From positions 62,001-126,000 of IMG/VR virus record IMGVR_UViG_3300044646_001937: 64,000 bases of DNA; one strand, 5' to 3'. The notes under the pieces are model-generated. The model ran no database searches, was not told where the DNA came from, and worked only from the letters and a program-made list of their open reading frames with translations. The translations under genes and the position numbers were made by a program. Below, one piece after another: positions 2,908 through 64,000 of the stretch (positions are counted from its first letter, which is position 1; every line of letters starts with the position of its first letter).

Positions 2908-2957
2908 TTTTCTAGATAGGAATTGAAAATCATAGACGTATAATATAGTATATAGTG

Positions 2958-4721: not shown

Positions 4722-4763
4722 TATATAATACTATAAAACTAACAAACAACCAGGAGTAACGAT

Positions 4764-7211: not shown

Positions 7212-7251
7212 TATTTGCTGTAAAAGATTTCTTTTATGACTAGAATATATT

Positions 7252-9165: not shown

Positions 9166-9187
9166 TATAGTTTAATATTACAGCCAT

Positions 9188-39824: not shown

Positions 39825-40517
39825 ATGCCTAGTTCTAAACAAGAAAAAATAACTAAACTTAAGGAATATTTTAGGAACATGCGTTTGGACGCATCTGTGA
39901 TGGGAAGGACTCTAGGAAGCTCATCTTCATATGTTTCGCCTCAAATAATGCTAGATACCACCAAGAAGCTGCTGGATGTGTTTGGTAGAAAGGTTGAACC
40001 TGATGATCGTGATAACGTCATCTTTTCCAAGTTTATGGGGCCTGAAGATCATATTAGAGAACATATTGAGCATGATGCAGGTAAGATTCAATTTAAAGCA
40101 AAGTCTAAGCTAAGACAAAAAAGAAACCTGTCATGGTTGCATGCAGGCTTCTTTTCTCCTCAGGTAAAATCTGTTTTTGTAGGTAACTCATTAAGTCAAA
40201 ATATTGAGGGTGTAAATCCGATGGAGCAGTATATGCTTGCACATAAAGTTACCAAAATGGGTGAGGGCGGTATCGGTTCTACTGAGGCTATTCCAGAATC
40301 TTCTAGAGAGGTAAATGAGTCTCAGTTTGGTTTACTTGACCCTATTCAAACAGTAGAGGCAACGACCATCGGGGTAGTAAATTTTTTCGTACATAATACC
40401 AGAAAAGGTACTGATGGAAAACTTTACAGACAGGTAATTGATAATGCTACTGGCAAGCCTGTATGGATTGATCATCATGAGTTTCTTTCTTCGGTTATAG
40501 ATATTCCTGAGCATTAG
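39825..40517 (+). CDS. RNA polymerase beta subunit, middle fragment (rifampicin region, fork loop)
   Basis: [19 protein letters not shown] ~ [42 protein letters not shown] ~ [23 protein letters not shown]. Confidence 0.85.
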   Translation: [230 protein letters not shown]

Positions 40518-47691: not shown

Positions 47692-48348
47692 CTAGTCTGC
47701 TCCTACAAGAATACCATACAGCTTATCTATCTCATCACCGTTATAGAGCATTCTGTTAGCATTGTATATTTTCTCTCCCCACGCGGCTTTCATTGTCCCA
47801 TCTGATATTCCTAGATCTTTTAAAACTCCGTAAAGTTTTACCTGCGAGTTCTTGATCATGATGATAAAGATCTGTTTGTCTGGTAGAAACATAATTCTAG
47901 CAGACTGCCCAGTTCTGGCCTCTGGATTGATGTGCGACTCTGGAATACCGTCTTGCCTAATCCTAGAATAGATACCTGGCAGCAATCTCTGCTGATTTAC
48001 ATTCTCATATTCTGAGCCGTTGTATATCACAGTATTGTGATTAGTTACATAAGGTACATGCGCAATAGTCGTACTCTTTGTTTCTACAACTTTACCTGAC
48101 GGTTTGTGTATTAGCTCTACAGTACCCTTTAGAGGGACAGTAAGATCTTTTTTCTCTAGTACAGCTTTCTTTTGTTCTGATGTGGTAATCTTATGCTCTC
48201 CAATACTTAAGTTCTTTACATTAAGTTTGAAGTCTTGCGTTTCAATTGCATTTAGTTTTTTACCAAAAGCATCTACAGCTGTATTGAACAGCATCTTTCG
48301 CAAATTAAACGGGTCATATAAATTGCGTGTGTCTTTTGGTGGCTGCAT
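47692..48348 (-). CDS. RNA polymerase beta subunit, N-terminal fragment
   Basis: [30 protein letters not shown] ~ [41 protein letters not shown]. Confidence 0.8.
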   Translation of the reverse strand: [218 protein letters not shown]

Positions 48349-50557: not shown

Positions 50558-50558
50558 A

Positions 50559-50936: not shown

Positions 50937-51282
50937 GTTCTCTTTTAAGGTTTTCTGTTATGTGGCGCACAAGATTAATCTTTTCACGCTCGCGCGCAAG
51001 AGCATTGTTTACATCTTCTACGCTCTTGTCCATCTCATCCATAGATAATCCTGCCAGAGCTCCTCCAGTAAGCGAACCCTTCAAACCTGTTTCAACTGCG
51101 CCAGGAACCATATTTCCAAAATTTTTAAGCATGTCGGTAGTGATGAATGCTATCTTATGCACACCTTCTCCAGTATTGATGTTTTGTAATGCGCCTTCTA
51201 GCTCAATAAGCGAAGAACCTTTTTTGCTGAGTTCTTGCGCAAGCTGAGCTTTGATAGCTTTAGCATATTTAGTAAGTTCCAT
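50923..51282 (-). CDS. K-x-A/glycine-zipper small protein
   Basis: TKYAK, HKIAF, GSLTGGALAG. Confidence 0.6.
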   Translation of the reverse strand: MELTKYAKAIKAQLAQELSKKGSSLIELEGALQNINTGEGVHKIAFITTDMLKNFGNMVPGAVETGLKGSLTGGALAGLSMDEMDKSVEDVNNALAREREKINLVRHITENLKREHGLN

Positions 51283-51284
51283 AT

Positions 51285-51659
51285 TTAGTATTTTTTAACT
51301 GTAGAAATTCCAGTTTTGGGGTCGTAGTCTGTAAATTTTCTTTCTTGTAGTGTACTATACATTATATTGCCTAGACCAAACCCAGCCAAGCTCAATAATA
51401 ATCTACCTGGTCTGGAAATCTTTGAATAGGATGCAGCTGTATGTGCTATAGCTGCTCCAGCCGCACCTGCGAGCAACTGATCAAACGCCTCAGGAGAATT
51501 AAGCATATGCATGAGGCTTTTCTTTTTCTGGTCAGGCAACCCATGATCTTCTTTTATAAATTTAAAGATCTTTGAAGGGTGCTGCAATACATCGTCTCCA
51601 AACAGGTTTAACCCGTTTGCTACTGGTGTTGCTGCAGATGATAGTCCGAATATAGGCAT
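51285..51659 (-). CDS. small protein with glycine-zipper helices
   Basis: LAGAAGAAI, LSLAGFGLG. Confidence 0.6.
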   Translation of the reverse strand: MPIFGLSSAATPVANGLNLFGDDVLQHPSKIFKFIKEDHGLPDQKKKSLMHMLNSPEAFDQLLAGAAGAAIAHTAASYSKISRPGRLLLSLAGFGLGNIMYSTLQERKFTDYDPKTGISTVKKY

Positions 51660-51662
51660 AGA

Positions 51663-52562
51663 TTATTCTGTTCTAATAGCCCTGGCCGCTAGCGCTGGTA
51701 GAGACGCTGCACCTAGTGCAAGCGCCTCATCCCCTATCCGACTAGACAAAGGCTTGCGATTTCTTTCAATCTCTCTGTCTGGATTAATTGCATCCATCAG
51801 TTTGCTTGCTCCGTGAGTTCCAAGATAGGCGAGAATAGTGGTGTTTACAGGATTTTCACTAGCATAGTCTACAGCACCTGAGGCTAGATCTTGAGTGCCT
51901 TCTGTGAGACTTTTTAAATGACTAGCAAGATCGTTTGCATCCATGCCATGTCCAGTGCCTGTGTAAGGGTTATATGCAGCAGCTTTAAACTGATCTTTAG
52001 CTCCATCTAATAGAGCTGACGGATCAATCAGCATAGAATCTGTGGTAATTGGTGCTGGAGGTTCCTGGACAGTTTGCTGCTGAGATATTGGTGCAGCCTC
52101 TTGCGGTTGAGTTTTAGCCTGCATCATTTTCAGCTTCTGCATAAACTTTTTAGATGGACTATATCTCCAGTTCTGTCCTTGCTCATGCTGAAGCATAAAC
52201 GTAGGGTTTTCAGCTCCTGTAGCCAGTGTCATATAAATGTTGTCTGGACTTGCCCTGTGAATCTGCGCTGTACCCTTGTTGATCGCTCCCTCTTCAAAGT
52301 TGAGCATGTTGTCGTCTGCAAGCCTTGATATGGGTGTGTCTTCTGCAGGATACTCGCCAGGAAAGCCTCCAAAGCTATAGACAAGATTTCCATCAGACAG
52401 TCTTAGCCCATCTTTGGTTCTAACATATTTCCACTTAGCCTGGCTGCTGATGTTAGGAAGAATGTTTTCGTTAACAGGCATACTGTTTACGTCAAAAGAA
52501 GAAACCTTTTCTATCTCTTCTTTTATTCCAAGATAAAAAGCCGGTAGATCTAGAGCTATCAT
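51663..52562 (-). CDS. hypothetical protein, K-x-A group
   Basis: 299 aa; EKVSS, FKAAA. Confidence 0.6.
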   Translation of the reverse strand: MIALDLPAFYLGIKEEIEKVSSFDVNSMPVNENILPNISSQAKWKYVRTKDGLRLSDGNLVYSFGGFPGEYPAEDTPISRLADDNMLNFEEGAINKGTAQIHRASPDNIYMTLATGAENPTFMLQHEQGQNWRYSPSKKFMQKLKMMQAKTQPQEAAPISQQQTVQEPPAPITTDSMLIDPSALLDGAKDQFKAAAYNPYTGTGHGMDANDLASHLKSLTEGTQDLASGAVDYASENPVNTTILAYLGTHGASKLMDAINPDREIERNRKPLSSRIGDEALALGAASLPALAARAIRTE

Positions 52563-52564
52563 AA

Positions 52565-55045
52565 CTATTTAGCTGAAAGTACTGGGTTGGCTTTGTTGTG
52601 TGCAGCAGTCAAAGGATTACCAGCGTTGGCGCCTACACCGTAAGAATCTTTCCAGCTGTTCATAAGCTTAGGAAGAAAATGCTGTCCGGCTACTGCTCCA
52701 GCCATAGGAAGAAGTATAGATGAAATACCAGGACCATCATCGTCGTCATCGCTAAGGCCTCTGCTAATTGCAGAACCTAGGAGTGCTCCTCCTCCTGTAC
52801 CCAGCATAGAGTTAGACATGAATGGAACAATCCTATGTCTGTCGTTATTGAGCATATCATCAGACTCTTTGAGCATTCCTTCAATAAAAGCTTCGTTAGC
52901 TCCTTCTTTAACCAACTGCTCTCTGAAGCCTTCCCATGCTTTCAGATATGCTGCTATCTTTTCTGACTCTTCAAGCTCTTTTGCTTTTTTTGTTCTGCTC
53001 TCAAGAATTTTAGTCTCTGCTTGTTTATATAATTCGACCAAAGATTCGCTAAGCATTCCTCTTGCAAAAGCATCATCGACCCCTAGCTCTTCTGCCATTT
53101 TCTTAAAGCCACTCACGCTAAATTCAAGAATTGCGTCAAACTCTGCTGTTTTAGGAATTGCTGTTCCTCTGGATGCTTTTTCCTTTAGCCATGCATCTAC
53201 TGCTGCAGGAGATCCTCCTGCACTAATCATCTTGGCTCTTTCTCTTTCTTCTCCTGGCATTCTGCTGATAGATGCTTGAGCTTGAGCTGGTGTAATTGCT
53301 CCACTCCTAACTCCCTGGTTTAATACCTGAGCTCCCCTCTCATAGTGCGATGGTGTACGGGCTTTTTGTTGCGTACTGTCTTGTGGCTGTGAGTTTTCCT
53401 GGATGATTGTCTCGCTGGCAGCCTGTGTGGGAGGGTTAGTTTCTGTGGAAGCCTGGGGGTCAGCTGCGGCTGATGGTGATGTTTGCGCTGCAGGTGCGGC
53501 TGGTTGCTGCGCTTCTGGTTGTGCATTAATAACTGCACCTCTTGATGGCATGCCTGGTGATTTGGTGCCAATGGCACCGGCCCTAGAAGGCATCCTGCTT
53601 CCCCTGGATTGCGGTAGGGGCACATTTGAAATAATAGGCTGTCTACCATTATTTTGATACAGCTCATCTAGCTGCTGTGCATTGAGGGTGTGTGGTTGGG
53701 GCTGTTCTTCTGAGGACTGAGTGGCCTGTTGTGTTTGTGAGGGTTGTTGTGTTTGTGCGGGCTGCGTTCCAGGTTTTGCCTGAGCTGGCATGGCATTTAC
53801 CACACCCTGCGCGCCGGCTGCTACTCCTTGATTTGAGTCTGGCTGATTAAATCCTTTGTAAATATCTCTGACTGCATTAGCTCCTGTAAGCCCAGTTGCC
53901 AAGGGACTGGTAACCGGAGCAATTATTGGAAATACGCCACCTGCTCCGCTACTCAATCCGGCTAAGGTATCAATTCCTGCTCCAAGGTAATCATTGTCTT
54001 TGAATCTGTTGTATGCCGAGCCAAGGCTAAGACCTGACCCTACAAAAGGAATAGCTCTGGGGGCACTTTGAGCTAGAATTTTAGCTACAGCAGGCATTGC
54101 GGCTTGTCCTGTGGAAACTGCACCTTTTCCATAATTACCGTCAGAAAACTCATTCAATGCATTTAAACCTGCGGCTGCGCTACCCAAACCTGTAAGCACT
54201 TTTCCTGCAGTGCCGACACCCTTAGCTAGGTTGCTAGCGCCAGGAGCGGGTGATCCTCCTGCAGGTGGAACTCCGCCGCCGCCAGTGGGGGGAGTTGGTG
54301 GCGCTCCTCCGCCTCCTTGACCTGCCCTAGCGGCATTGAATTTGTTGACCACATTGTTGGCCATGTTCTTTGCTCCCTGCCAAGCATTGGTAGCCTTTTG
54401 CTTTACTCCACCCACAAAGTTGCCAGCTGCTGAAGTTGGTTGAGGTGCTGCTTGTGGGTTTGTTGGGTTAGCCTGTGGAAGACCAGCCCTGGCAGCAGGT
54501 GCTGCTTGTGCAGGAGACGACTCTATGTCGATGACCTGGTTGTTTAGCTTTGGACTATTAGTCTTTGCGCCTGCTGTTCCTTTTGAGGGTGAAATAACCT
54601 CGTCTGGAGTGAGCACCTTTGTGGCTTGAGCTTCTGTGGTGGTGTTGTGAAGCCTTGGACTGTTTGCTTGTGATGCTGAGGAAGAGCTTGCTGGGGGGAC
54701 TACGTTAGCATTCCTGGGTACAATAGCGTTGGGCTTTACCTTTGGAGCTCTTTTTGTGTTCTTTGGGGCACTCTTTCCTGCTCCTGGGGTTGTTGCGTTC
54801 TGAGGTGCTGGAGGAGTTTTTGGCTTCAGCTTGACCTCTTGAGGATACGACTGAGAGTTGTAGCCCTTCTGGAACTCTTGAGCTTTCTGTCTGATTCCTT
54901 GCATGAACTTTCCGAACTGATCCTGAGGAAGACCCATTGCCATCTTTGTTGCAGCCTCTTTGCTCATCCCCAGCCCTACTGCTTCGTCCACGAAGCCGTC
55001 GATCATGCTTTGAAAGATTTCTTTTTCCTGTAGGTTGCTGCTCAT
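52565..55045 (-). CDS. large low-complexity K-x-A protein with membrane-type helices (ejection-protein-like)
   Basis: 826 aa; KEAA, KMAM, KTAE, KMAE, KQAE, KIAA; IPFVG...DYLGAGID helical hairpin. Confidence 0.65.
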   Translation of the reverse strand: MSSNLQEKEIFQSMIDGFVDEAVGLGMSKEAATKMAMGLPQDQFGKFMQGIRQKAQEFQKGYNSQSYPQEVKLKPKTPPAPQNATTPGAGKSAPKNTKRAPKVKPNAIVPRNANVVPPASSSSASQANSPRLHNTTTEAQATKVLTPDEVISPSKGTAGAKTNSPKLNNQVIDIESSPAQAAPAARAGLPQANPTNPQAAPQPTSAAGNFVGGVKQKATNAWQGAKNMANNVVNKFNAARAGQGGGGAPPTPPTGGGGVPPAGGSPAPGASNLAKGVGTAGKVLTGLGSAAAGLNALNEFSDGNYGKGAVSTGQAAMPAVAKILAQSAPRAIPFVGSGLSLGSAYNRFKDNDYLGAGIDTLAGLSSGAGGVFPIIAPVTSPLATGLTGANAVRDIYKGFNQPDSNQGVAAGAQGVVNAMPAQAKPGTQPAQTQQPSQTQQATQSSEEQPQPHTLNAQQLDELYQNNGRQPIISNVPLPQSRGSRMPSRAGAIGTKSPGMPSRGAVINAQPEAQQPAAPAAQTSPSAAADPQASTETNPPTQAASETIIQENSQPQDSTQQKARTPSHYERGAQVLNQGVRSGAITPAQAQASISRMPGEERERAKMISAGGSPAAVDAWLKEKASRGTAIPKTAEFDAILEFSVSGFKKMAEELGVDDAFARGMLSESLVELYKQAETKILESRTKKAKELEESEKIAAYLKAWEGFREQLVKEGANEAFIEGMLKESDDMLNNDRHRIVPFMSNSMLGTGGGALLGSAISRGLSDDDDDGPGISSILLPMAGAVAGQHFLPKLMNSWKDSYGVGANAGNPLTAAHNKANPVLSAK

Positions 55046-56327
55046 ATGGTAAGATTCTAGAATCAGATTTAGATTTTTCTTGTTTTATTGTAGTAGATTC
55101 GCTCTCGTTTTGCAACAAACTATCCTCTTTCTTCTCTCTAGCCTTTTTTTTAGGTATCCTAGCACAGCCTACTCTGTTGACCTTTCCTAGAGCTGCTGTG
55201 TCCTTTTTGAACAGCCAGACCAGTTCTCTGTAGCATTCTTTGGTGTTGTGGTTGAGTTCTGGAATGTTGTCTTCTCTGATTTCTCTCATATAGGTCTCAG
55301 CAAGACTGTAGCAGTTGTGAAGATAGTTGATCATCTTGCTGATGTCTTTGTAGCTGGAAACTAGCTTGGGTACTTCCTTGTGGTCTACATTAGAAGTAAG
55401 GATGCTCATGTGCTTTCCAGGATTGTGCTTGTTGAAGTAGTCAGCACAGAGCTTTGCACGCTCAAAGAGACTTTCTCTGTTCTTTTCTTTTTCTAGAAAG
55501 AAGACCAGATGAGTATGAGGACGATATTTCTTGCATAGAATAGAGTCTACACTGATTTCGTTGCTGTAGATGTAGCTAGAGACGCACTTCTTCTTGTTGA
55601 GCATTCTAGAGAAGAAGCTAGCGTTAGACTTGAAGAAGAGCTGATAGTCTTTTTTCATAAGCTCAGCTGAAGAGTACTTTTTGTCTTCTTGTAGAATCAC
55701 AGCCTGAAAGCAGACCATAGTAGAGAAGAGAGATTCTACATCATAGTGGTTGTTGAACTTTCTGTAGGCTCTCAGGCAGGTTTTAGGATCTAGAGTACGA
55801 TTGTCTAGGCAATGCTTGCTATAGGATAGATCTACAGGATTTTTAAGATTAGTAAGAATGCTGTCCTTACCATTGCTTACTATGTTGGTAGTATCGCAAC
55901 CTAGGCTTAATAGCAGATGAGTTTCTAGATTTTTTCTTTTAAGACCAAACCTATTGCTGTTTCCAGTAGTATCACTCAGTACCAGCTTTCTAAAGACAAC
56001 CTTTTCATGATTAGAGAGCAAGTGCCAGTTCTCTACATAGTCATTAGGGTTAGTATAGTTGATAGAGTGTTTAGAGAGAACAGGCCTAGAGCTAGTCACA
56101 TATGAGGATAGTGAGGAGAAGTCATTACCAGAGCCTATGAAGCGGTCTATTGCTTCTCTAGAGGGAGGAGGTATGTTTCCGTGCTTATCCTCACAGTAGT
56201 AGTAGCTGTCTTTGTTCTCTTCACTAGCACTCATAGAGCAAGAGTGCCTTGTTTCAAAGCAATCCTCAGAGGGAGAGGATGATAAAGCTATGAATTCTTC
56301 GAAAGTAAGCCTTGAGGAGCGAGCCAT
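54705..56327 (-). CDS. HUH (Rep-like) endonuclease-like protein; true end probably near 55138
   Basis: EIS...YRPHTHLVF HUH motif; last 113 codons overlap the next gene and cover its promoter. Confidence 0.45.
   Translation of the reverse strand: MARSSRLTFEEFIALSSSPSEDCFETRHSCSMSASEENKDSYYYCEDKHGNIPPPSREAIDRFIGSGNDFSSLSSYVTSSRPVLSKHSINYTNPNDYVENWHLLSNHEKVVFRKLVLSDTTGNSNRFGLKRKNLETHLLLSLGCDTTNIVSNGKDSILTNLKNPVDLSYSKHCLDNRTLDPKTCLRAYRKFNNHYDVESLFSTMVCFQAVILQEDKKYSSAELMKKDYQLFFKSNASFFSRMLNKKKCVSSYIYSNEISVDSILCKKYRPHTHLVFFLEKEKNRESLFERAKLCADYFNKHNPGKHMSILTSNVDHKEVPKLVSSYKDISKMINYLHNCYSLAETYMREIREDNIPELNHNTKECYRELVWLFKKDTAALGKVNRVGCARIPKKKAREKKEDSLLQNESESTTIKQEKSKSDSRILPYEQQPTGKRNLSKHDRRLRGRSSRAGDEQRGCNKDGNGSSSGSVRKVHARNQTESSRVPEGLQLSVVSSRGQAEAKNSSSTSERNNPRSRKECPKEHKKSSKGKAQRYCTQEC
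55087..55115 (-). promoter_or_regulatory. sigma70-like promoter for the leftward operon
   Basis: TTGCAA-17-TACAAT. Confidence 0.7.
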
Positions 56328-56464
56328 TGAGATATTGGTAAGATAGAGAGGGTATGAGAGTCAATAGGGAATGAGAGAAGTATCTAGTGAGAGAGTGGGA
56401 TTAGTGGGGAGTAAGGGAAATGTAGACATCTACTATCTATATACGTGTCTCTGGCACCCATGTA

Positions 56465-56493
56465 TTGCAACTTAGAGGGAAGCAGGGTATACT
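56465..56493 (+). promoter_or_regulatory. sigma70-like promoter for the rightward RNAP operon
   Basis: TTGCAA-17-TATACT. Confidence 0.7.
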
Positions 56494-56516
56494 CTAGTGA
56501 AAAGTCCCAGTGCCAT

Positions 56517-56822
56517 ATGAAATCCCTTAAGAAAATCAAAACTATCACAGTTCGAGGCAAGAGGTATAGGTTTATTGTAAAAAAACTCAAGGATGCCAGA
56601 GGACTTACAGATCACCCCGAGACCAAAGGCAAAGCTGTAACCATTGATGAGAGGGAAAGAGGAAAGAAATTGCTGGCAACTCTCATCGACGAGCTTATAC
56701 ACTGTGCTATATGGGAGATACAAAACGACATAGTAGATCAGATATCAGATGATATGGCAGACATACTATGGAGATGCGGTCTTAGGTTTAAAGACGAACT
56801 GGAAGAAACAGAAGAAGAATAA
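56517..56822 (+). CDS. zincin-like small protein with variant DELIH motif
   Basis: ATG 56517 lies downstream of the promoter; TLIDELIHC ~ TLIHELIH. Confidence 0.5.
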   Translation: MKSLKKIKTITVRGKRYRFIVKKLKDARGLTDHPETKGKAVTIDERERGKKLLATLIDELIHCAIWEIQNDIVDQISDDMADILWRCGLRFKDELEETEEE

Positions 56823-56824
56823 AT

Positions 56825-59800
56825 ATGCCGAATAAGAGCCACAAGTATGTTTTGGACAATGGGAAGTTGAAGAAAGTTCTTGGAACCACCAAAGCCAAGT
56901 ACAGCATTCCAGACCCATCATCCTTTTTCAGCCCTGTTACAAATCTGATTCCAGGTATCAGTTCTGTGTCTGGTGCTCGCGTATTGATTGGAGACAAGTC
57001 ATCCCTCCAGGCAATGACCCTGGTAAACAGAGAGGCTCCGCTGATACAGTCGGCCCCTAAGAACGTAAAAGGCGTAACCACCGAGAGCTTCAGCAAGCAG
57101 TTCGGTAAGCTTGTAACCGTAAACGCTAAAGCTGACGGAACAGTTACCAAGATAGACGAAGACCATATTGTGATCAAAGACAAGCTGAGTAAGCTTCATG
57201 AACACGACCTCTATAACAACTATATTGTAGGAAGAGAAAGCTACCTACACCACACTCCTGTGGTTAAGGTTGGAGACAAGGTCAAAGCTGGAGACCTCCT
57301 AGCCACATCGAACTATTCTGATGGTAAGGGTATGCTTGCTCTTGGTATGAACCTCAAGACAGCTATCATGCCCTACAGATCTCTTAACTTTGAAGATGCT
57401 CTGGTTATTTCCGAGACAGCAGCAAAGAAACTAGAGGGAGAGCAGCTGATTCCTGTACGCATGGAAATTGCTAGAGGGATGATAGTAGACAAAGACCAGT
57501 ACGTCTCGATGTTCCCTAATAAATTCTATAACGAGCAGTTGTCTAATATTGCTAGCAATGGTGTGGTCAAAAAAGGAACAGTATTGAACCATGGAGATCC
57601 AGTGATTCTAGCCTGCCAGCCTAAGTCGCTTAAATCTCTAGATATTCAGTTGGGTAATTTGTCTAAAGCTGTAAAGAATGCGTTCTCAGACGTAGGAACC
57701 ATCTGGGAGTATGAATATCCTGGTGAAGTCACAGACGTATCGGTCACATCAAAGCTAATAGCTGTTACGGTTAAGACAAAAAGACCTATGAGCTATGGAG
57801 ACAAACTAAACATGCCGTTCGGAGCAAAAGGCGTTGTACACATTGCTCCTGATACACAGATGCCCCAGGGAGAAGACGGCAAACCTGTAGATGTATTGCT
57901 CAACACTATGAGTATTACCTCTCGCGTTGCTCCAGGATTGGTAAATACTATCGGGCTAGGTAAGCTGGCAGAAAAGAAAGGAAAGGCCCTGAACATGTCG
58001 GGCTTTACCGAAGGTTCCGCAGTCCAAAAGGTGGCCGATGTTTTGGCTAAGAACAATATTAAAGATACCGAGAAACTGTATGATCCTATTTCAGGCAAAC
58101 ATATTGATGTGATGACAGGTCCGCTATACTTCAACAGATTACATCATATTGCCGAAGATAAAATATCTACAAGATCGGCAGCAACCACCTACGACATTAA
58201 CATGCAGCCCTCTAAAGCAGGATCGCATGAAAAAGCTAAACGTCTAGGTAATCTGGCTACCACCGTAGCACTATCAAACGACGCTAAAGCCGTACTTAGA
58301 GATGTTGCCACAGTCAGAGCCACAAAGAATGACGAGTTTTGGACAGCCTTGAAACTAGGGCATGCTCCACCTCCACCAAAAACCCCATTCATATTTGAGA
58401 AGTTCCTAAGCCACCTCAAAGGCTCTGGAGTGAATGTGGTTCAAGACGGTTCTAAGTTTCATATCATGCCTCAAACAGATAAAGATGTTGTAGCACTTTC
58501 ACAAGGAGCAATTACAGAACCTCTAGGCTACAAACTTAAAAAAGATGCACTCATGCATGAAGAAGGAGGACTTTTTGATCCTACACTCACAGGCATTCAT
58601 GGCAACAACTACAATCATGTGGAGTTAAATCATAAAATCCCAAACCCGATGGCTGAAGAGCATCTCAGAAAATTACTGAAGATGACTAAGGCAGCATATG
58701 ATGACGCTATCGCATCAGGAGAATTAGAGAATAAGCTTAAGGCTATGAATCTGGACGATAAGATCACAGAGCTAAAGCAATTGGTAGCGTCCAAGAGAAA
58801 ATCAGGCAGAGATGACGCTATTAAAGCTCTAAGCTTCCTGACAATGCTTAAAGAAAAAAACCTAAAGCCTGACGACATGATGCTCTCAAAGCTGGCGGTA
58901 ATTCCTGCCCAGTATAGACCTGTAATGGTTCAGGGAAATCAGACTCTGACCGCAGACGTGAACGAGCTCTATAAGGACGTGATGCTGGTTAACAAGTCAT
59001 ATGGAGAAGCCAAAGATTCTCCAGACATAGACAAGGAACATTTAACTGAAGCAAAAAAGCAAATCTATGCAGGAGTCAAAGCTGTCTATGGTTTGGGTGA
59101 ACCTATTAAGCAAAAAAGTGTAGAAAAGAACTACAAAGGCTTATTAGCATCGGCTTTAGGTTTGCAAGGCGGATCAGCCAAAGAATCTATGTTTCAGGCA
59201 AAGGTGGTAAACAAGCCTATTGATCTTGTAGGCAGAGCAGTGTTGCTTCCTGACTCTAAATTAGACTTGAATCAGGCTAGTATTCCTCAGCAGGTAGCAT
59301 GGAGTATCTATTCTCCTTTTGTTATTCGCAGATTGGTAAGACAAGGCATACCAGCCACCAAAGCCAGAGAATATTTAGACAACAAGCATCCTCTGGCACT
59401 GTCAGCACTACAGGACGAGATGACAGATCGCCCAGGCATTGTTACCAGAGATCCGCAACTTTCAAAGTACAACTTTCAGGGTATGTACCTAAAAATGAAT
59501 CCTGATCCAAAGGACTTTTCGATTAAATTAAATCCTTTGGTGTTTAAGGGGTATGGCGGAGACAGTGATGGTGACCAGCTTAACGTACAGCTACCAGCTA
59601 GTGAAGACGCAAAAGAGGAAGTTAAAGAGAAATTGCTTCCTGAAAAGAATCTTATCTATCACAGAACATTTAGTCCAATATTCACACCATCCAACGAAGC
59701 TGCTACCGGTTTATTCGCTGCAAGTTTTGAAGATAATAAGAATACTCCTAAGAAATACAGCTCTCCCCAGGACGTGGTTAAAGATTTTTTAGCAGGAAAG

Positions 59801-59830
59801 CTTGATGTTGGTGACAGAGTAGAGTTATAA
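56825..59830 (+). CDS. fusion of RNAP beta C-terminal part and beta' N-terminal part (catalytic subunit)
   Basis: beta motifs NFEDA, GDKL....G.KGV, RLHHIAEDK; beta' motifs NHVEL, VIPAQYRP, DLVGRAV, TRDPQL, GGDSDGDQ. Confidence 0.93.
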   Translation: MPNKSHKYVLDNGKLKKVLGTTKAKYSIPDPSSFFSPVTNLIPGISSVSGARVLIGDKSSLQAMTLVNREAPLIQSAPKNVKGVTTESFSKQFGKLVTVNAKADGTVTKIDEDHIVIKDKLSKLHEHDLYNNYIVGRESYLHHTPVVKVGDKVKAGDLLATSNYSDGKGMLALGMNLKTAIMPYRSLNFEDALVISETAAKKLEGEQLIPVRMEIARGMIVDKDQYVSMFPNKFYNEQLSNIASNGVVKKGTVLNHGDPVILACQPKSLKSLDIQLGNLSKAVKNAFSDVGTIWEYEYPGEVTDVSVTSKLIAVTVKTKRPMSYGDKLNMPFGAKGVVHIAPDTQMPQGEDGKPVDVLLNTMSITSRVAPGLVNTIGLGKLAEKKGKALNMSGFTEGSAVQKVADVLAKNNIKDTEKLYDPISGKHIDVMTGPLYFNRLHHIAEDKISTRSAATTYDINMQPSKAGSHEKAKRLGNLATTVALSNDAKAVLRDVATVRATKNDEFWTALKLGHAPPPPKTPFIFEKFLSHLKGSGVNVVQDGSKFHIMPQTDKDVVALSQGAITEPLGYKLKKDALMHEEGGLFDPTLTGIHGNNYNHVELNHKIPNPMAEEHLRKLLKMTKAAYDDAIASGELENKLKAMNLDDKITELKQLVASKRKSGRDDAIKALSFLTMLKEKNLKPDDMMLSKLAVIPAQYRPVMVQGNQTLTADVNELYKDVMLVNKSYGEAKDSPDIDKEHLTEAKKQIYAGVKAVYGLGEPIKQKSVEKNYKGLLASALGLQGGSAKESMFQAKVVNKPIDLVGRAVLLPDSKLDLNQASIPQQVAWSIYSPFVIRRLVRQGIPATKAREYLDNKHPLALSALQDEMTDRPGIVTRDPQLSKYNFQGMYLKMNPDPKDFSIKLNPLVFKGYGGDSDGDQLNVQLPASEDAKEEVKEKLLPEKNLIYHRTFSPIFTPSNEAATGLFAASFEDNKNTPKKYSSPQDVVKDFLAGKLDVGDRVEL

Positions 59831-59873
59831 ATGTACAGGCACAATAGTCTTTATTTTTATAACTTTTTAGTTT

Positions 59874-60074
59874 ATGCTTGATGAAAATATATGGATGCAA
59901 CTCAGCGAAGATGAAAAATTTGCAGAGTTACAGACGTATTTAAATACTATAATTAAAATAGATGAAGGCCTGCATGAGCTAAGTCATACCCCAGAGCAAG
60001 GAAAGCTTGCCTGTATGAAAAAAGAACTGCAGTCAAAAGTTTTTAAAATAATAGAAATAGAAAACGCAATATGA
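59874..60074 (+). CDS. small helical hypothetical protein
   Basis: 66 aa; 4-nt overlap with the next gene. Confidence 0.55.
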   Translation: MLDENIWMQLSEDEKFAELQTYLNTIIKIDEGLHELSHTPEQGKLACMKKELQSKVFKIIEIENAI

Positions 60075-60961
60075 AAGTATCTGAACTAATCAACTCCTAC
60101 AGCAGTATAGTTAAAGTGGCTGAAGCAAATAAACTCACGCAGAAGAGCGTGAAGCAGGCCTTTGTCGCCAATCCAAATGTGCCCCCTCCACAACCCGGTC
60201 AACCAGTACAGCAGGCACTACCTCCAGGACAGCAAGATCCACAGCAGCAGGCTGCAGCCCAACAGCAAGCTCAAGCGGCACCAGAACAACAAGCTGCACC
60301 ACAACAGGCAGCTCAGCCTGGCCCGCAGGTAACGCAATTAATGCAGCTTGTACAGCAGCTACCTCCAGAAATGCAGCAGCAGATTGGCGGCGCACTGCAG
60401 CAGCTACAGCAAATGCCTCCCCCTCAGCAGGAGCAGACAGCAGGTCAGCTAATACAGCAAATCTCTGCAAGCATGCAGCAACAGCAGGCACCTCAGCAGG
60501 CACCCGCACAACCACCACAAGCACCTCAACAGCCACAGGCGGCTCCTCAGCCAATGGAAGCACAGGCAGGACTTGAGGAAGATCTTTATGCTGCATCACA
60601 AGGCATGCAGCAACCTCCTCAGGATCCATCACAACAGATGCCACCCCAACAACAAGACCCAGCAGCAGAAGATGCGGCGCAGGCAGAGCAATCAGCCATT
60701 GAAGCCAAAAACGAGTTAGATAATGTTAAAGTAACCCTATCAGTTAGAGAACTACTTGATCTGGTAGGTAAGGGTTCCGCCACAGCATCATTATTGAAGG
60801 TCAAGCAGCTGGCCGACACACATCAGCAAAAGATGGAACAGACAAAGCAGAAAGCCGAAGCTGATCAGCAGAAGGCTCAAGCACAGCAACAGCAGCAACA
60901 ACAAGCAGACCAGCAAGGCATGATGGGCGGAGGCATCTACCCAACACCGATGGGTACGTAA
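60071..60961 (+). CDS. Gln/Pro/Ala-rich disordered K-x-A protein
   Basis: 296 aa; KVAE, KQAF; long Q-rich tract. Confidence 0.7.
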   Translation: MKVSELINSYSSIVKVAEANKLTQKSVKQAFVANPNVPPPQPGQPVQQALPPGQQDPQQQAAAQQQAQAAPEQQAAPQQAAQPGPQVTQLMQLVQQLPPEMQQQIGGALQQLQQMPPPQQEQTAGQLIQQISASMQQQQAPQQAPAQPPQAPQQPQAAPQPMEAQAGLEEDLYAASQGMQQPPQDPSQQMPPQQQDPAAEDAAQAEQSAIEAKNELDNVKVTLSVRELLDLVGKGSATASLLKVKQLADTHQQKMEQTKQKAEADQQKAQAQQQQQQQADQQGMMGGGIYPTPMGT

Positions 60962-60971
60962 TTTTCAAGAT

Positions 60972-61382
60972 ATGCCAGACTACTCTAAACTAGCGGCCTT
61001 CTTAAATTCTTTTGATGTCCTTGACCCAGGATATGACGCAGTCTCTTTTATTAAAGAGAAGATTGCCCAGGATCTACAGGATGCAAACACAATTAACAAT
61101 GGCGATGAAGAAGATCTTCAAGATAACGACATCACCATGTCTACACCAGAACAGCAGGATAACGAGAACGTTGAAGGCAAGGAGATGGAAGGGGCCTTTA
61201 AAGAACTTGAGGCGTTAAATCAGATAGATGAGGAGAAGAAGGAAGTCATTAAGCCCAAAGAGCAGTCCACCTATTCTGCAATGCAAACAGATTTTCCGTC
61301 TGTTTCGGTGCTTGGCAATCATCCCAATATCAACAAGCAAGCTTCGTTATTTACATTGTTGCAGAAAAAACTTAAAGCATAA
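60972..61382 (+). CDS. acidic K-x-A protein
   Basis: 136 aa; EKIAQ, NKQAS; TAATG overlap with beta'-C. Confidence 0.65.
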   Translation: MPDYSKLAAFLNSFDVLDPGYDAVSFIKEKIAQDLQDANTINNGDEEDLQDNDITMSTPEQQDNENVEGKEMEGAFKELEALNQIDEEKKEVIKPKEQSTYSAMQTDFPSVSVLGNHPNINKQASLFTLLQKKLKA

Positions 61383-63232
61383 TGGCTGTAACTACCACAG
61401 GACAGGTATTGTTGAAGTTCTTCCTACCTCAACAATTTCATAATCTAGTTCAGGATGTCATTTTAGATAAAAAGGGCATCTCTAAGCTTTTTGCAGAATT
61501 AGCGGAAAAGGCTCCTGAAGAATATAGTAAAATTGTATCAGATCTTACTAGATTAGGTTTCGAGATTGCTACAAGACAAGGTACGTCTATTACTTTAAAA
61601 GATCTAATCTCTCCCATCAATAAAGATAAAGAGTGGGATGAGTTTGAAAAATTTAAAGAAGAAACAGAAAAGTCAAACGACTCAAAAAGCATTAAAGACA
61701 ATAAGATCTTTAATAAATACAACGACATGATGTCTAGTATTGAAAAAGATCTATTGAATAAGGGTCTTGCTGATAATAAGTCATTGGCTAAGATTATCAT
61801 GGCAGGATCCCGAGGTTCTCCAGCACAATACAGAGGAACAATTGCAACACAGGGAATCGTAGTGGATGCAGAGGGTAAGCCTAAAATGGATCTACCTATT
61901 AAAAGTTCTTATGCTGAAGGCTTATCTTTACCAGAATATTTAGCTACTTCGTTTGGTACTAGGTCTGGGGAAGTGTTAAAAAAGATTAGTGTGGCGCAGG
62001 GCGGGTATGGCTCCAAGCAATTTGCAAGAGCGCTAATGCCTCTACAGGTAGTAGAGGCAGACTGCGAAACAATGAACGGTATCAGTGTTTCTGTAGACGA
62101 CAAAGAATCAGCAGGGTCCTATCTAGCCAAAGGAGTGTTAGACTATAATAGGAATAACGAAGTGACATTAAAAATGCTCAACGATCTTAGAAATAAGAAA
62201 GTTGAGAAGATTGTTATTCGTACACCCATGACATGTCAGTCTAACAAAAAACATCACTCAGGTGGTTTGTGTCAGATGTGTGTAGGTAAAAGAGAAAAGG
62301 GAATGGCAGCAATGGACAGCTATGTAGGTCTGGTGGCAGGTACGGCTGTAGCGGAACCATTAACAGAAAGCGCGATGAAGGCCAGACATTCAGGAGGCGC
62401 AGCCACGTCACTAGGAGGACAATCAGGCTTTAAGCTAATCAATCAGCTGGCCAACGTACCTAAGACATTTGTAGGCAGAGCCCCCCTAGCTCAAGAGGAC
62501 GGATTTGTTACTAAAGTAGAGAAAGCTGACGCTGGAGGTTACTTTATAACCGTGAATAATGAAGAGCATTATATTGGGATTGATCAGGAACCTAAAGTAC
62601 AGCAAGGAGACAGAGTAGAACAGGGACAGGTATTAAGTACAGGTCTTGTAGATCCTAGAGAGGTTGTAAAATATAGAGGAATTGGAGACGGGCGTAAGTA
62701 TTATATGGAGGCAATGAAGAAAGCATTCGACGACAGCAGTCTTCCTGTAAATCGCAGAAATTTTGAGCTGATTGCGAAAGCTGCTGTAGATCATGTCAAA
62801 ATCACAGACCCCGAAGGTATAGGTAATTATCTTCCAGATCAGGTGGTGTCATACTCAGCTATTGAGAAAGACTATAACCCCAGAAGTAACTCTAAGATGC
62901 TTAGGATAGATATGGCCTATGGTAAATATATGGAGAAACCTGAGCTTCACTACACCATTGGCACCAGAGTTACCTCCGCCGTAATCAGAGATCTCAAAGA
63001 ACATGAGATTGAATCTGTACTGGTTAACGATCAACCCCCCAACTTTGAACCAGTAATGGTACGTCTGGTGGACGTACCAGAGCATCATGAAGACTGGATG
63101 CATGTATTAAACAGCACCAACCTCGCAAAAAGGTTTGTAAATATGGTCAACAGAGGATCTACATCAGACACAAAAGGCCCTAGCCCTATACCTGGGTTAG
63201 CTATGGGTGTTGGGTTTGGACAGAAAGATTAA
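61382..63232 (+). CDS. RNA polymerase beta' subunit, C-terminal fragment
   Basis: TTGQ, GSRGS, PIKSSYAEGL, bridge helix GTRSG...GGY, Zn site C..TC..CQMC, trigger loop EPLTESAMKARHSGG. Confidence 0.92.
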   Translation: MAVTTTGQVLLKFFLPQQFHNLVQDVILDKKGISKLFAELAEKAPEEYSKIVSDLTRLGFEIATRQGTSITLKDLISPINKDKEWDEFEKFKEETEKSNDSKSIKDNKIFNKYNDMMSSIEKDLLNKGLADNKSLAKIIMAGSRGSPAQYRGTIATQGIVVDAEGKPKMDLPIKSSYAEGLSLPEYLATSFGTRSGEVLKKISVAQGGYGSKQFARALMPLQVVEADCETMNGISVSVDDKESAGSYLAKGVLDYNRNNEVTLKMLNDLRNKKVEKIVIRTPMTCQSNKKHHSGGLCQMCVGKREKGMAAMDSYVGLVAGTAVAEPLTESAMKARHSGGAATSLGGQSGFKLINQLANVPKTFVGRAPLAQEDGFVTKVEKADAGGYFITVNNEEHYIGIDQEPKVQQGDRVEQGQVLSTGLVDPREVVKYRGIGDGRKYYMEAMKKAFDDSSLPVNRRNFELIAKAAVDHVKITDPEGIGNYLPDQVVSYSAIEKDYNPRSNSKMLRIDMAYGKYMEKPELHYTIGTRVTSAVIRDLKEHEIESVLVNDQPPNFEPVMVRLVDVPEHHEDWMHVLNSTNLAKRFVNMVNRGSTSDTKGPSPIPGLAMGVGFGQKD

Positions 63233-63309
63233 CCTGTTACGGAACAAGAAGGTTCTTGATATACAAGTAGAAAGTTTATAAAATTGATTTAAATCTAAGA
63301 TAATTTACT

Positions 63310-64000
63310 ATGCGCAAAACAACTCTTAAAAAACAGGCAGCAGACGACCAGATCGAGGGAGCCTTTTTCCAGCTTGCCTACCAAAGACTGCAAGATACTC
63401 TTAAAAATCTTATTCCTTATCTTGTAGGATTTGAAATTGTTAAGAAAAACCCAGAGAATACAAAAGCCCTGGGCGTCTTTGGGTTTAGGTCAAAAAATGG
63501 ACAGATTTTGTTTGTACCTGCCTTTTTCATTAATGGTAAAGTAAAGAACCTGGATTTGCTTTATAGTAAGAACAATGAACAGTTCTACCCCCTAAACGAA
63601 GATTTTGCAGAAATGTTCATTAAAGATGAACTTTTGGGGTTGGGTGAAAACTCTAACGAAAACAGGACTTCAGTCATGCGCGATGCCTCCCAGGGAGACT
63701 ATCGTCAGATGGCTATTCCTCCCAGAACAGGTAGATATGCTATCGCCTCTGTTTTGGATTATGTGGAAAACTCAGATAACAAGACCAAGAAAGCTTTCAC
63801 AGAGCTTATTGAAAAAGACGCTGAGTTCTGTGAGTCACTGCTGAGATTTTACCCTCTTGAGAAAGTAGCAAAAGCTATTGCCCTTGAAGATGGTAAAGAG
63901 TATCGCAAATCAGACCAGGCCGCAAAGAAGATCGAACTGGTTAAGATGAAGGATAAGGAAAAGGTTAAAAAGTTAAACGATTCTCAAAAGTCCACCCTCA
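63310..64000 (+). CDS. 3'-truncated K-x-A protein (not in ORF track)
   Basis: Open to window end: MRKTTLKKQAADDQIEGAFFQLAYQRL...GFEIV...ALGVFGF...VPAFFING. Confidence 0.75.
   Translation, partial: MRKTTLKKQAADDQIEGAFFQLAYQRLQDTLKNLIPYLVGFEIVKKNPENTKALGVFGFRSKNGQILFVPAFFINGKVKNLDLLYSKNNEQFYPLNEDFAEMFIKDELLGLGENSNENRTSVMRDASQGDYRQMAIPPRTGRYAIASVLDYVENSDNKTKKAFTELIEKDAEFCESLLRFYPLEKVAKAIALEDGKEYRKSDQAAKKIELVKMKDKEKVKKLNDSQKSTL

What the first reader, a model, noticed from the sequence alone, without database searches (positions are those of the whole stretch)
57797..59575. Altered catalytic core: GGDSDGD loop, PFGAKG, and deleted clamp zinc-binding domain
Seen: the universal NADFDGD reads GGDSDGD, with all three Asp kept (59561-59575). 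Beta GDKxxxRHGNKG reads GDKLNMPFGAKG, with both Lys kept (57797). The canonical GLFCxxIFG-[CxC..CxxC]-GHIEL is shortened to GLFDPTLTGIHGNNYNHVEL (58565-58627), so the beta' zinc-binding domain is absent, while the second Zn site in beta'-C is intact. Known: this domain contributes to promoter-spacer contacts and to factor-dependent termination/antitermination. Inference: an active enzyme with different initiation or termination behaviour.
Basis: partly seen in the sequence, partly recalled or inferred. Interest (0 to 1): 0.65.

Follow-up and report, generated by a model that had tools for sequence, protein, structure and literature searches.

The report
Zinc-less phage RNA polymerase, remodelled core
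The gene is the central subunit of a lake-water phage's own RNA polymerase, which has lost a zinc-binding domain and rewritten several "universal" active-site residues while keeping every residue needed for catalysis. The same changes are conserved across a large uncultured phage clade.

Summary
All three observations are real. Window 56825-59830 (+) encodes a 1001-aa fusion of the C-half of RNA polymerase beta with the N-half of beta'. It reads GDKLNMPFGAKG (57797-57832), GGDSDGD (59555-59575) and GLFDPTLTGIHGNNYNHVEL (58568-58627). That last stretch sits where bacterial beta' carries its Cys4 zinc ribbon, and the whole chain has a single Cys. The second zinc site lies in beta'-C (61382-63232) and is intact.

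None of this is an accident of one genome. All 113 metagenomic homologues aligned (52-83% identical, about 997 aa) lack the ribbon, and all keep the first two Asp, both beta Lys and Arg425. The G[GA]D[SC]DGD form marks a 74-member subclade. That subclade also changes trigger-loop Gln929 to Glu.

The ribbon loss is shared with Salmonella phage Arash and Vibrio phage D69, and phage AR9 is a published precedent.

The enzyme is built from four polypeptides, because beta-N is split into two more genes. The genome encodes two sigma-like proteins, and one is predicted to dock on the retained clamp helices.

My reading is an active, probably sigma-dependent phage RNA polymerase with a remodelled sugar pocket. 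It is a new variant of a known kind. Changed initiation, termination or sugar selectivity is plausible but untested.

The parts
56825..59830 (+). Gene for the 1001-aa fusion subunit. Residues about 20-540 are the beta C-half and residues about 545-1001 are the beta' N-half.
   Evidence: Pfam hits are Rpb2_6 at 1.7e-46, plus Rpb1_2 and Rpb1_1. PDB matches are beta and beta' chains at E about 1e-35 to 1e-30. The AF2 model has pLDDT 81.8. Foldseek's top hits are bacterial beta chains.
57386..57400 (+). Beta NFEDA loop, residues 188-192. These are the acidic pair equivalent to E. coli E813/D814.
   Evidence: N188, F189, E190 and D191 are invariant in 113 homologues. The loop aligns to the bacterial NFEDS.
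57797..57832 (+). Beta catalytic loop GDKLNMPFGAKG, residues 325-336. Both Lys are kept, while Arg-His and Asn of RHGNKG are replaced by Pro-Phe and Ala.
   Evidence: K327 and K335 are invariant. Inteins split this loop in P0076, P0078 and P0117.
58568..58627 (+). GLFDPTLTGIHGNNYNHVEL, residues 582-601. This is the site where the beta' N-terminal Cys4 zinc ribbon is missing, about 33 residues shorter than in bacteria.
   Evidence: The alignment is and the single Cys in the chain is shown. The ribbon is absent in all 113 homologues. The AF2 model shows a short helix at 586-589 and a strand at 596-606, with pLDDT about 87.
58955..59089 (+). Beta' clamp helices (coiled coil), residues 711-755, retained. 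This is the predicted docking site of a phage sigma-like protein.
   Evidence: AF2 helices run 711-729 and 737-755. The predicted interface covers residues 713-746, with ipSAE 0.76 against a best control of 0.01.
59444..59467 (+). TRDPQLSK, residues 874-881, in place of NRAPTLHR. Arg875 (equivalent to Arg425) is kept.
   Evidence: R875 and P877 are invariant.
59555..59575 (+). Beta' metal-binding loop GGDSDGD, residues 911-917, in place of NADFDGD.
   Evidence: D913, D915 and G916 are invariant and D917 is nearly so. An intein lies between D and S in P0077.
61382..63232 (+). Gene for beta'-C, 616 aa. It carries the bridge helix, trigger loop and second zinc site.
   Evidence: Pfam Rpb1_5, Rpb1_3 and Rpb1_4 hit it, as does phrog_25354.
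62063..62281 (+). Second zinc site, C228, C285, C297 and C300, intact.
62351..62404 (+). Trigger loop AEPLTESAMKARHSGGAA. The Gln929 equivalent is Glu, and the Met932 and His936 equivalents are kept.
   Evidence: Glu occurs only in the G[GA]D[SC]DGD subclade, while Gln is kept elsewhere.
47692..48348 (-). Beta-N1, 218 aa, matching residues 33-223 of Arash gp206.
   Evidence: One search gives E 1.1e-18. It is a separate ORF of 74-77% identity in 4 of 5 related records.
39825..40517 (+). Beta-N2, 230 aa, matching residues 232-469 of Arash gp206.
   Evidence: One search gives E 4.2e-22. Pfam Rpb2_3 hits it at 3.9e-06. It is a separate ORF of 81-85% identity in 4 of 5 related records.
56445..56822 (+). 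Small conserved ORF that ends directly before the fusion gene. Its real start is probably the ATG at about 56517. Its function is unknown.
   Evidence: It is 65-76% identical in 6 relatives at the same place. It has no family hit and no Cys4.
60071..61382 (+). Two conserved ORFs between the fusion gene and beta'-C. One is 296 aa and Gln/Pro-rich, the other is 136 aa and acidic. Their function is unknown, and they are possible accessory subunits.
   Evidence: Synteny is kept in near and far relatives. There is no family hit and no Cys.

Best explanation
P0001 is the central subunit of a phage-encoded, bacterial-type, two-barrel RNA polymerase. The phage is a 204-kb tailed phage from lake water.

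Composition. The enzyme is assembled from four polypeptides: beta-N1 (218 aa), beta-N2 (230 aa), the beta-C::beta'-N fusion (1001 aa) and beta'-C (616 aa). The fusion ties together the two double-psi beta-barrels that form the active centre.

Catalysis. The chemistry is the ordinary two-metal one, and these residues are all kept:
- the three Asp of the beta' loop;
- the two Lys and the Glu-Asp pair of beta;
- the Arg425 equivalent;
- the bridge helix;
- the Met and His of the trigger loop.

Remodelled residues. What has been rewritten is the set of non-chemical residues lining the substrate-sugar pocket.
- Beta' Asn458 becomes Gly.
- Beta' Phe461 becomes Ser.
- Trigger-loop Gln929 becomes Glu.
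- Beta RHGN becomes PFGA.
I infer these are a compensated, clade-specific set rather than decay.

Zinc ribbon. The beta' N-terminal zinc ribbon was lost. I infer from its distribution that the loss predates the split from the Arash/D69 phages.

Promoter recognition (inferred). It most likely goes through phage-encoded sigma70-family proteins that dock on the retained clamp helices. By analogy with Arash, the enzyme and a sigma may be carried in the virion to start early transcription independently of the host polymerase.

Without the ribbon, the enzyme lacks the surface that bacterial and lambdoid-phage regulators and Rho use. I therefore expect it to be blind to those controls. This last step is inferred from established knowledge, not shown here.
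For: Identity and architecture. It is the only polymerase set found in a complete genome with terminal repeats.

Catalytic residues are invariant in 113 homologues. dN is about 0.15 with dS saturated. Ser914 is coded by both AGT and TCT in different relatives. The polymerase genes are about 80% identical between relatives, while the ORFs between them are 45-57% identical.

Inteins lie inside both catalytic loops in relatives. This is the usual situation for conserved sites of enzymes that must work after splicing.

The motif states are clade traits. G[GA]D[SCN]DGD fills a 74-row clade with full support. Glu929 is confined to the G[GA]D[SC]DGD genomes looked at, and Gln is kept in NLDLDGD, NADNDGD, AADNDGD, NFDHDGD, Arash, D69 and Salmonella.

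Ribbon loss is shared with Arash and D69, whereas the mReC Vibrio phage 1.031.O keeps it.

Sigma: there are two sigma-like ORFs. One hits Sigma70_r4_2 at 27.7 bits against a cut-off of 25.7. The other hits Sigma70_r3 at 30 bits against 25.3 and is homologous to Arash gp10 at E 2.4e-14. The predicted docking of the second on beta' residues 713-746 scores 0.76 against a best control of 0.01. That mark was reached by 58 of 80 solved complexes and 2 of 110 mismatched pairs. The runs agree in at least 34% of contacts and the partner's pLDDT is at least 70.

Virion: in Arash particles gp206 (beta plus beta'-N) is the most detected protein, and gp216 (beta'-C) and sigma gp10 are also found (PMC10585845).

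Asn458Ser in E. coli costs less than 5-fold in sugar selectivity, and Arg425 is the main determinant (PMC7862312). So loss of Asn458 is compatible with an RNA polymerase.
Against: - No biochemical or expression data exist for this phage, and none of the listed sequencing runs that hold the gene is an RNA library.
- The docking score may reflect memory of solved sigma-beta' complexes. It does not tell whether the sigma-like protein serves the phage or the host polymerase.
- Virion carriage is known only for Arash, which is about 30% identical.
- No alpha homologue was found, so assembly must differ from that of the bacterial core.
- I found no shared promoter motif.
- The co-variation of the beta and beta' loop states rests on only two changes on the tree.
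Confidence: 0.68

Rival explanations
1. The remodelled pocket changes what the enzyme accepts. The four changes involved are Asn458 to Gly, Gln929 to Glu, Phe461 to Ser and beta Asn to Ala. The result would be relaxed or altered discrimination at the ribose 2'/3'-OH, or use of modified or non-canonical initiating nucleotides. On this reading the polymerase is functionally distinct rather than neutrally drifted.
For: Two of the three residues called universally conserved 2'-OH contacts are replaced together in one subclade. Those three are Arg425, Asn458 and Gln929 (PMC7862312). The replacements are then strictly conserved. A small polar residue at the position that is bulky in the other two-barrel polymerases compared is unusual. 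AR9 has DYDGD, and bacteria, Arash and mReC have F, Y and H.
Against: Arg425, the main determinant, is invariant. Asn458Ser has small effects in E. coli. Glu can still hydrogen-bond the ribose hydroxyls, so the changes may compensate for each other. No assay exists.
Confidence: 0.12
2. The polymerase is sigma-independent, like the phiKZ and AR9 non-virion enzymes, and uses an unrelated specificity subunit. That subunit could be one of the conserved ORFs next to the genes. The two sigma-like proteins would then redirect the host polymerase instead.
For: The ribbon-less precedent, AR9, uses gp226 and not a sigma. Conserved ORFs of unknown function flank the polymerase genes in all relatives. Phage sigma factors that act on host core are common (established knowledge).
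Against: The clamp helices are retained, and the sigma-like protein is predicted to dock on them in the canonical way. In Arash the sigma is found in particles together with the polymerase. The closest sequence relatives are bacterial cores, not the phiKZ or AR9 subunits.
Confidence: 0.15
3. The protein is a decayed polymerase kept for a structural, non-catalytic role in the particle.
For: Several 'universal' residues are changed. The Arash homologue is very abundant in particles.
Against: All residues that carry the chemistry are invariant over sequences down to 52% identity. The trigger loop and bridge helix are conserved to the letter. No other RNA polymerase was found in the genome. Inteins are kept in the catalytic loops.
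Confidence: 0.04

Closest known systems
RNA polymerase of Salmonella phage Arash (gp206 and gp216) and of Vibrio phages D69, D148 and D181
   Same: They are the best matches among deposited phages, at about 30% identity over 94-98% of the fusion. Beta is joined to beta'-N in one chain and beta'-C is a separate gene. There is no zinc ribbon (GGLFD..TGGP..W.H), the Asn of NADFDGD is lost (AADYDGD), and the second zinc site is kept. A homologous sigma-like gene is present.
   Different: In Arash and D69 the whole beta is in the fusion (1525 aa). Here beta-N is cut off and split into two distant genes. Arash keeps a bulky Tyr in the loop, HGNKG in beta and Gln929.
mReC phages (Weinheimer and Aylward 2020, PMC7481178), for example Vibrio phage 1.031.O
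   Same: They are tailed phages of 150-200+ kb that encode beta and beta' close to cellular ones. The best PHROG families for the fusion are phrog_24349 and phrog_25354.
   Different: The mReC example keeps the zinc ribbon and NADHDGD. The survey required NADxDGD and chains of at least 800 aa, so this clade would have been filtered out.
Non-virion RNA polymerases of jumbo phages AR9 and phiKZ
   Same: They are phage multisubunit polymerases made of split beta and beta' pieces without alpha or omega. AR9 lacks the beta' N-terminal zinc domain (PMC7618050), and its loop is DYDGD, not NADFDGD.
   Different: Those phages carry two polymerase sets and a non-sigma fifth subunit, and they lack the rudder. 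Here there is one set, sigma-like genes are present, a segment aligns to the rudder, and sequence similarity is highest to bacterial cores.
Bacterial RNA polymerase core (E. coli, T. thermophilus)
   Same: The fold and domain order match. The catalytic Asp triad, beta Lys pair, Arg425, bridge helix, trigger loop, clamp helices, flap region and second zinc site are all present.
   Different: There is no N-terminal zinc ribbon. Asn458, Phe461, Gln929 and beta Arg-His-Asn are replaced. No alpha was found. The subunit boundaries differ.
Cyanobacterial and plastid split beta' (gamma plus beta')
   Same: Beta' is cut at nearly the same place. PDB gamma subunits of 624-625 aa align to fusion residues 628-995 up to their own residue about 551.
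   Different: There the N-piece is a free subunit with a zinc ribbon. Here it is fused to beta-C and has none.

Membership tests
Multisubunit (two double-psi beta-barrel) DNA-dependent RNA polymerase | Beta' barrel loop with three Asp (DxDGD) | tested here: met
   DSDGD is at residues 913-917. D913, D915 and G916 are invariant and D917 is in at least 90% of 113 homologues.
Multisubunit (two double-psi beta-barrel) DNA-dependent RNA polymerase | Beta barrel loop with two Lys (GDK....KG) and the acidic ED pair | tested here: met
   K327, K335, E190 and D191 are invariant.
Multisubunit (two double-psi beta-barrel) DNA-dependent RNA polymerase | Bridge helix and trigger loop with Met and His | tested here: met
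   Beta'-C aligns over both elements. The trigger loop reads AMKARH and is identical in 7 relatives.
Cellular-type RNA polymerase (bacteria, archaea, eukaryotes) | Full NADFDGD signature | tested here: not met
   It reads GGDSDGD.
Cellular-type RNA polymerase (bacteria, archaea, eukaryotes) | [quoted passage not shown] | tested here: not met
   The stretch is 33 residues shorter, and there is one Cys in the chain.
Cellular-type RNA polymerase (bacteria, archaea, eukaryotes) | Three conserved ribose contacts: Arg425, Asn458 and Gln929 (PMC7862312) | tested here: not met
   Arg is kept, Asn is replaced by Gly, and Gln is replaced by Glu.
Bacterial RNA polymerase core | Alpha dimer as the assembly platform | tested here: not met
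   PF01000 finds nothing in the complete genome, while all 14 control genomes ring. A very divergent alpha cannot be excluded.
Bacterial RNA polymerase core | Second zinc site in beta' (C814, C888, C895, C898) | tested here: met
   C228, C285, C297 and C300 align to it and are invariant.
Sigma-dependent holoenzyme | Clamp helices that bind sigma region 2, and a cognate sigma70-family protein | tested here: inconclusive
   The helices are present. There are two sigma-like ORFs. Predicted docking scores 0.76 against a best control of 0.01. No binding experiment exists, and the target could be host core.
mReC phage polymerases (PMC7481178) | The authors' inclusion criteria: NADxDGD, and beta and beta' chains of at least 800 aa | tested here: not met
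   The loop reads GGDSDGD. Beta is split 218 + 230 + about 540 aa, and beta' is split about 460 + 616 aa.
phiKZ/AR9-type jumbo-phage polymerases | Two sets (virion and non-virion) of split subunits | tested here: not met
   Only one match to the fusion exists in the complete genome.
phiKZ/AR9-type jumbo-phage polymerases | Absence of the beta' rudder | tested here: inconclusive
   A segment aligns with the bacterial rudder region, but the model gives it no clear hairpin.
Arash-type phage polymerase | Beta joined to beta'-N, a separate beta'-C, and no zinc ribbon | tested here: met
   The difference is that only the C-half of beta is in the fusion here.
Virion-packaged RNA polymerase | Detection of the subunits in purified particles | not testable with these tools
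   This is known only for Arash (PMC10585845).

The most novel reading that the evidence does not exclude
A widespread freshwater phage clade has rebuilt the sugar-recognition pocket of a multisubunit RNA polymerase. Asn458 becomes Gly, Gln929 becomes Glu, Phe461 becomes Ser or Cys, and beta Asn becomes Ala. As a result its selectivity at the ribose hydroxyls, or its choice of initiating nucleotide, would differ from that of all studied cellular-type enzymes.

The Ser or Cys at the centre of the metal loop may be tied to intein traffic through that site, where it serves as the +1 nucleophile.
Probability: 0.12. Interest if true: 0.8.

Novelty: new variant of a known kind. Interest (0 to 1): 0.5.

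Why it matters
The beta' N-terminal zinc domain and the NADFDGD loop are treated as universal marks of cellular-type RNA polymerases. Here a large, abundant and uncultured clade of lake phages does without the first and has rewritten the second, under clear purifying selection.

This is a natural experiment on which active-site residues are truly needed. It bears especially on sugar selection, where Asn458 and Gln929 are two of the three proposed contacts.

It may also be a sigma-using core without the zinc ribbon. That would test how much the ribbon contributes to promoter-spacer contacts, RNA-exit-channel events and factor-dependent termination.

In practice, surveys that filter on NADxDGD or on chain length miss this clade. 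Some of its members are annotated in databases as 'biotin carboxyl carrier protein'.

Tried and rejected
- Megablast of 50000-64000 against deposited phages found no match.
- dN/dS could not be given as a ratio because synonymous sites are saturated. I report only dN of about 0.15.
- The co-variation test gave a perfect split: beta GNKG goes with a bulky beta' loop residue, and GAKG with Ser, Asn or Cys (22 against 91 rows). That is only two changes on the tree, both concordant, and the sign test cannot reach significance. I report it as an observation only.
- I searched 78 upstream regions of the whole genome for an enriched 8-mer. Nothing came up beyond A/T runs, so no promoter consensus was found.
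- Alpha subunit (PF01000): none found.
- T7-like single-subunit polymerase (PF00940): none found, but no control genome rang either, so this is not informative.
- Foldseek on the whole model returned only beta chains among the 50 matches listed. It therefore gave no separate structural check of the beta' N-terminus. I did not fold the beta' half alone.
- A zinc ribbon supplied in trans by a neighbouring small ORF is rejected. The ORFs at 60071-61382 have no Cys. The ORF at 56445-56822 has only two Cys after its probable start, and they do not lie in a CxxC pattern.
- A His-based replacement zinc site in 582-606 is rejected, because only H598 (the His of GHIEL) is invariant.
- Cluster look-up for names of relatives returned no organism names.
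- I did not use read laying, because no listed run is an RNA library. I did not use the large representative search, because the family was already clear.
Full report
**Where the window lies.** The window is bases 62001-126000 of a 204,454-bp IMG/VR virus record with direct terminal repeats, rated complete. The left part of the window carries collagen-like tail-fibre genes, so this is a tailed phage. DNA nearly identical to the gene occurs in lake-water and freshwater metagenomes. Twenty of the 21 listed runs hold at least part of it, from 18 studies, and none is an RNA library.

**The observation.** ORF 56825-59830 (+) gives P0001, 1001 aa.
- Pfam finds Rpb2 domain 6 on residues 102-464 and Rpb1 domains 1 and 2 on 667-935.
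- Solved bacterial beta chains match residues about 20-540, and beta' chains match about 610-1000, with E-values of 1e-35 to 1e-28.
- The gene is therefore a fusion of the C-half of beta with the N-half of beta'.

- GDKLNMPFGAKG lies at 57797-57832.
- GLFDPTLTGIHGNNYNHVEL lies at 58568-58627.
- GGDSDGD lies at 59555-59575.

Alignment with Salmonella beta and beta', which share E. coli numbering, confirms the equivalences.
- GGDSDGD lies on NADFDGD.
- GDKLNMPFGAKG lies on GDKMAGRHGNKG.
- Only 13 residues separate GLF from HVEL, where the bacterium has 46 that include the four zinc-binding Cys.

It fails outright, because P0001 has one Cys. The small ORFs around the gene do not supply a ribbon either. 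In the AF2 model (mean pLDDT 81.8) residues 582-606 form a short helix and a strand at good confidence. The second zinc site sits in the separate beta'-C gene 61382-63232. Its C228, C285, C297 and C300 align with C814, C888, C895 and C898.

**The rest of the enzyme.**
- The N-terminal 480 residues of Arash gp206 match two small ORFs far from the fusion gene, at 47692-48348 (-) and 39825-40517 (+). The second has an Rpb2 domain 3 hit.
- Both are separate ORFs, 74-85% identical, at the same relative places in four of five related records.
- The polymerase is thus made of four polypeptides.
- The fusion has a single match in the genome, so there is one set and not two.
- No alpha subunit was found.

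**How general the features are.** The word search returned 408 proteins at E of 1e-10 or better. The best 120 are 52-83% identical, and 113 of them are about 997 aa long, with the same architecture. They come from contigs of up to 190-290 kb.
- In the 113 aligned sequences, D913, D915, G916, K327, K335, E190, D191, R367 and R875 are invariant and D917 is nearly so.
- All 113 lack the ribbon, and 81 have no Cys at all.
- The loop reads G[GA]D[SCN]DGD in a fully supported clade of 74 rows that includes the window.
- The other rows read NLDLDGD, NADNDGD, NFDHDGD or AADNDGD.
- The beta loop keeps GNKG wherever the beta' loop has a bulky residue, and reads GAKG wherever it has Ser, Asn or Cys. That is only two changes on the tree, so it is not statistically testable.

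I then fetched contigs of six farther relatives and read their beta'-C genes. The trigger-loop residue equivalent to Gln929 is Glu only in the G[GA]D[SC]DGD genomes. It is Gln in all other relatives, in Arash, in D69 and in Salmonella. In the window's near relatives the trigger loop is identical to the letter apart from one Ser-to-Gly change in L008.

Between the window and five relatives dN is about 0.15 while synonymous sites are saturated. Ser914 is coded by AGT in some relatives and TCT in others, with TGT (Cys) in between. The polymerase genes are about 80% identical, against 45-57% for the ORFs between them. All of this points to strong purifying selection on a working enzyme.

**Inteins.** Five relatives are longer than the rest.
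- Three carry an insert of about 350 aa between GDK[LV] and SNxxGAKG of the beta loop. It starts with Cys and ends with Asn followed by Ser.
- One carries an insert of about 440 aa between the first Asp and the Ser of the beta' loop. That Ser is then the +1 residue.
- One carries an intein with splicing and LAGLIDADG domains directly after DCDGD.

Inteins settle in conserved sites of proteins that must function after splicing, so this is further indirect support for activity. It also raises the idea that Ser or Cys at the centre of the loop is linked to intein occupancy. This is speculation.

**Relatives with names.** The best deposited matches are Salmonella phage Arash and Vibrio phages D69, D148 and D181, at about 30% identity over 94-98% of the fusion.
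- There the whole beta is joined to beta'-N (1525 aa), and beta'-C is a separate gene.
- They lack the ribbon too and read AADYDGD.
- They keep a bulky Tyr, HGNKG and Gln929.
- An mReC phage, Vibrio 1.031.O, keeps the ribbon and reads NADHDGD.
- On this distribution the ribbon loss looks older than the loop remodelling, which belongs to the window's subclade. The tree is unrooted, so this ordering is inferred.

The mReC survey required NADxDGD and chains of at least 800 aa, which would exclude this clade (PMC7481178).

The literature says the N-terminal zinc domain is shared by all multisubunit polymerases. It is kept in the phiKZ non-virion enzyme but not seen in the AR9 one (PMC7618050). AR9 also reads DYDGD (PMC9209446). 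Loss of the ribbon in a phage enzyme therefore has a precedent.

**How it probably works.** The chemistry-bearing residues are all there, so I take it to be an active RNA polymerase.

Mäkinen et al. name Arg425, Asn458 and Gln929 as the conserved contacts of the substrate 2'-OH. They find Arg425 dominant and Asn458Ser worth less than 5-fold (PMC7862312). Here Arg is kept and the other two are replaced together, by Gly and Glu. Ser replaces Phe461, and Ala replaces the beta Asn. The simplest reading is a compensated rebuild in which Glu and Ser take over hydrogen bonding. A real change of selectivity is possible but unproven.

For promoter recognition, the genome has two sigma-like ORFs outside the window.
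- A 194-aa ORF at record position 33629-34213 has a region-4 hit above the Pfam cut-off and a weak region-2 hit.
- A 210-aa ORF at about 155747-156379 has a region-3 hit above the cut-off and is homologous to Arash gp10.

A complex prediction of the second ORF with the beta' half of P0001 scored 0.76 against a best control of 0.01.
- That mark was reached by 58 of 80 solved complexes and 2 of 110 mismatched pairs.
- The runs agree in at least 34% of contacts, and the partner's pLDDT is at least 70.
- The interface lies on the clamp helices, residues 713-746, which is where sigma region 2 binds in bacteria.
- This supports binding but does not show it. It may reflect memory of solved holoenzymes, and it cannot tell phage core from host core.

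In Arash particles the fused subunit is the most detected protein, and beta'-C and the sigma are present too (PMC10585845). The enzyme may therefore be injected to start early transcription. For the window's phage this is analogy only.

Loss of the ribbon should remove the surface used by regulators of the bacterial enzyme, and it should change the RNA exit channel. That follows from general knowledge of the bacterial enzyme and was not tested.

**Verdict.** This is a new variant of a known kind, namely a four-piece, ribbon-less, probably sigma-using phage polymerase with a conserved, rewritten sugar pocket. It is typical of a large uncultured freshwater clade. I rate interest at about 0.5.

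Noticed in passing
Relatives P0076, P0078 and P0117 (beta loop); P0077 and P0104 (beta' loop): Inteins or intein-like inserts of 340-510 aa sit exactly inside or right after the two catalytic loops. One lies between GDK[LV] and SNxxGAKG, one between D and SDGD, and one after DCDGD. In P0077 the loop's central Ser is the +1 residue.
   Followed up: partly
Window 47692-48348 (-) and 39825-40517 (+): The N-half of beta is split into two small genes on opposite strands, 8.5 and 16 kb from the fusion gene. The arrangement is conserved in relatives.
   Followed up: yes
G000:C1:33629-34213 (L017:1462-2046) and G000:C1 about 155747-156379 (L020:1492-2124), both outside the window: There are two sigma70-family-like ORFs. 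The second is homologous to the particle-associated sigma gp10 of phage Arash and lies among probable structural genes.
   Followed up: partly
Window 60071-60961 (+): A 296-aa Gln/Pro-rich, low-complexity protein is encoded between the polymerase genes, followed by a 136-aa acidic protein (60972-61382). Both are syntenic in all relatives, and their function is unknown.
   Followed up: partly
Window 63310-63999 (+), which runs off the window: This ORF is about 81% identical in relatives, as conserved as the polymerase. It is weakly related to Arash gp218, annotated 'structural protein' (E 2.8e-10).
   Followed up: no
Window 2955-12570 (+): This is a row of large genes with collagen-like tail-fibre repeats, hitting many PHROG tail-fibre families.
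   Followed up: no
Window 35887-36459 (-) and 37177-39027 (-): A cobalamin adenosyltransferase gene (Pfam 4.9e-41) lies next to a ribonucleotide reductase-like gene. This suggests a B12-dependent reductase with its own cofactor-activating enzyme.
   Followed up: no
Window 52565-55045 (-) and 54705-56327 (-): Two long ORFs on the same strand overlap by about 340 bases. The real start of the 826-aa ORF is probably further downstream. Only its C-terminal 90-180 residues are conserved in relatives.
   Followed up: no
Relatives: Several members of this polymerase family are named 'biotin carboxyl carrier protein' by their source, probably because of the lipoyl-like hybrid motif in beta (weak Pfam Biotin_lipoyl_2 and Peptidase_M23 hits).
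   Followed up: no
One relative in alignment A2 (row with GFTADSDGH): A single homologue has His in place of the third Asp. This could be a sequencing error or a decayed copy.
   Followed up: no
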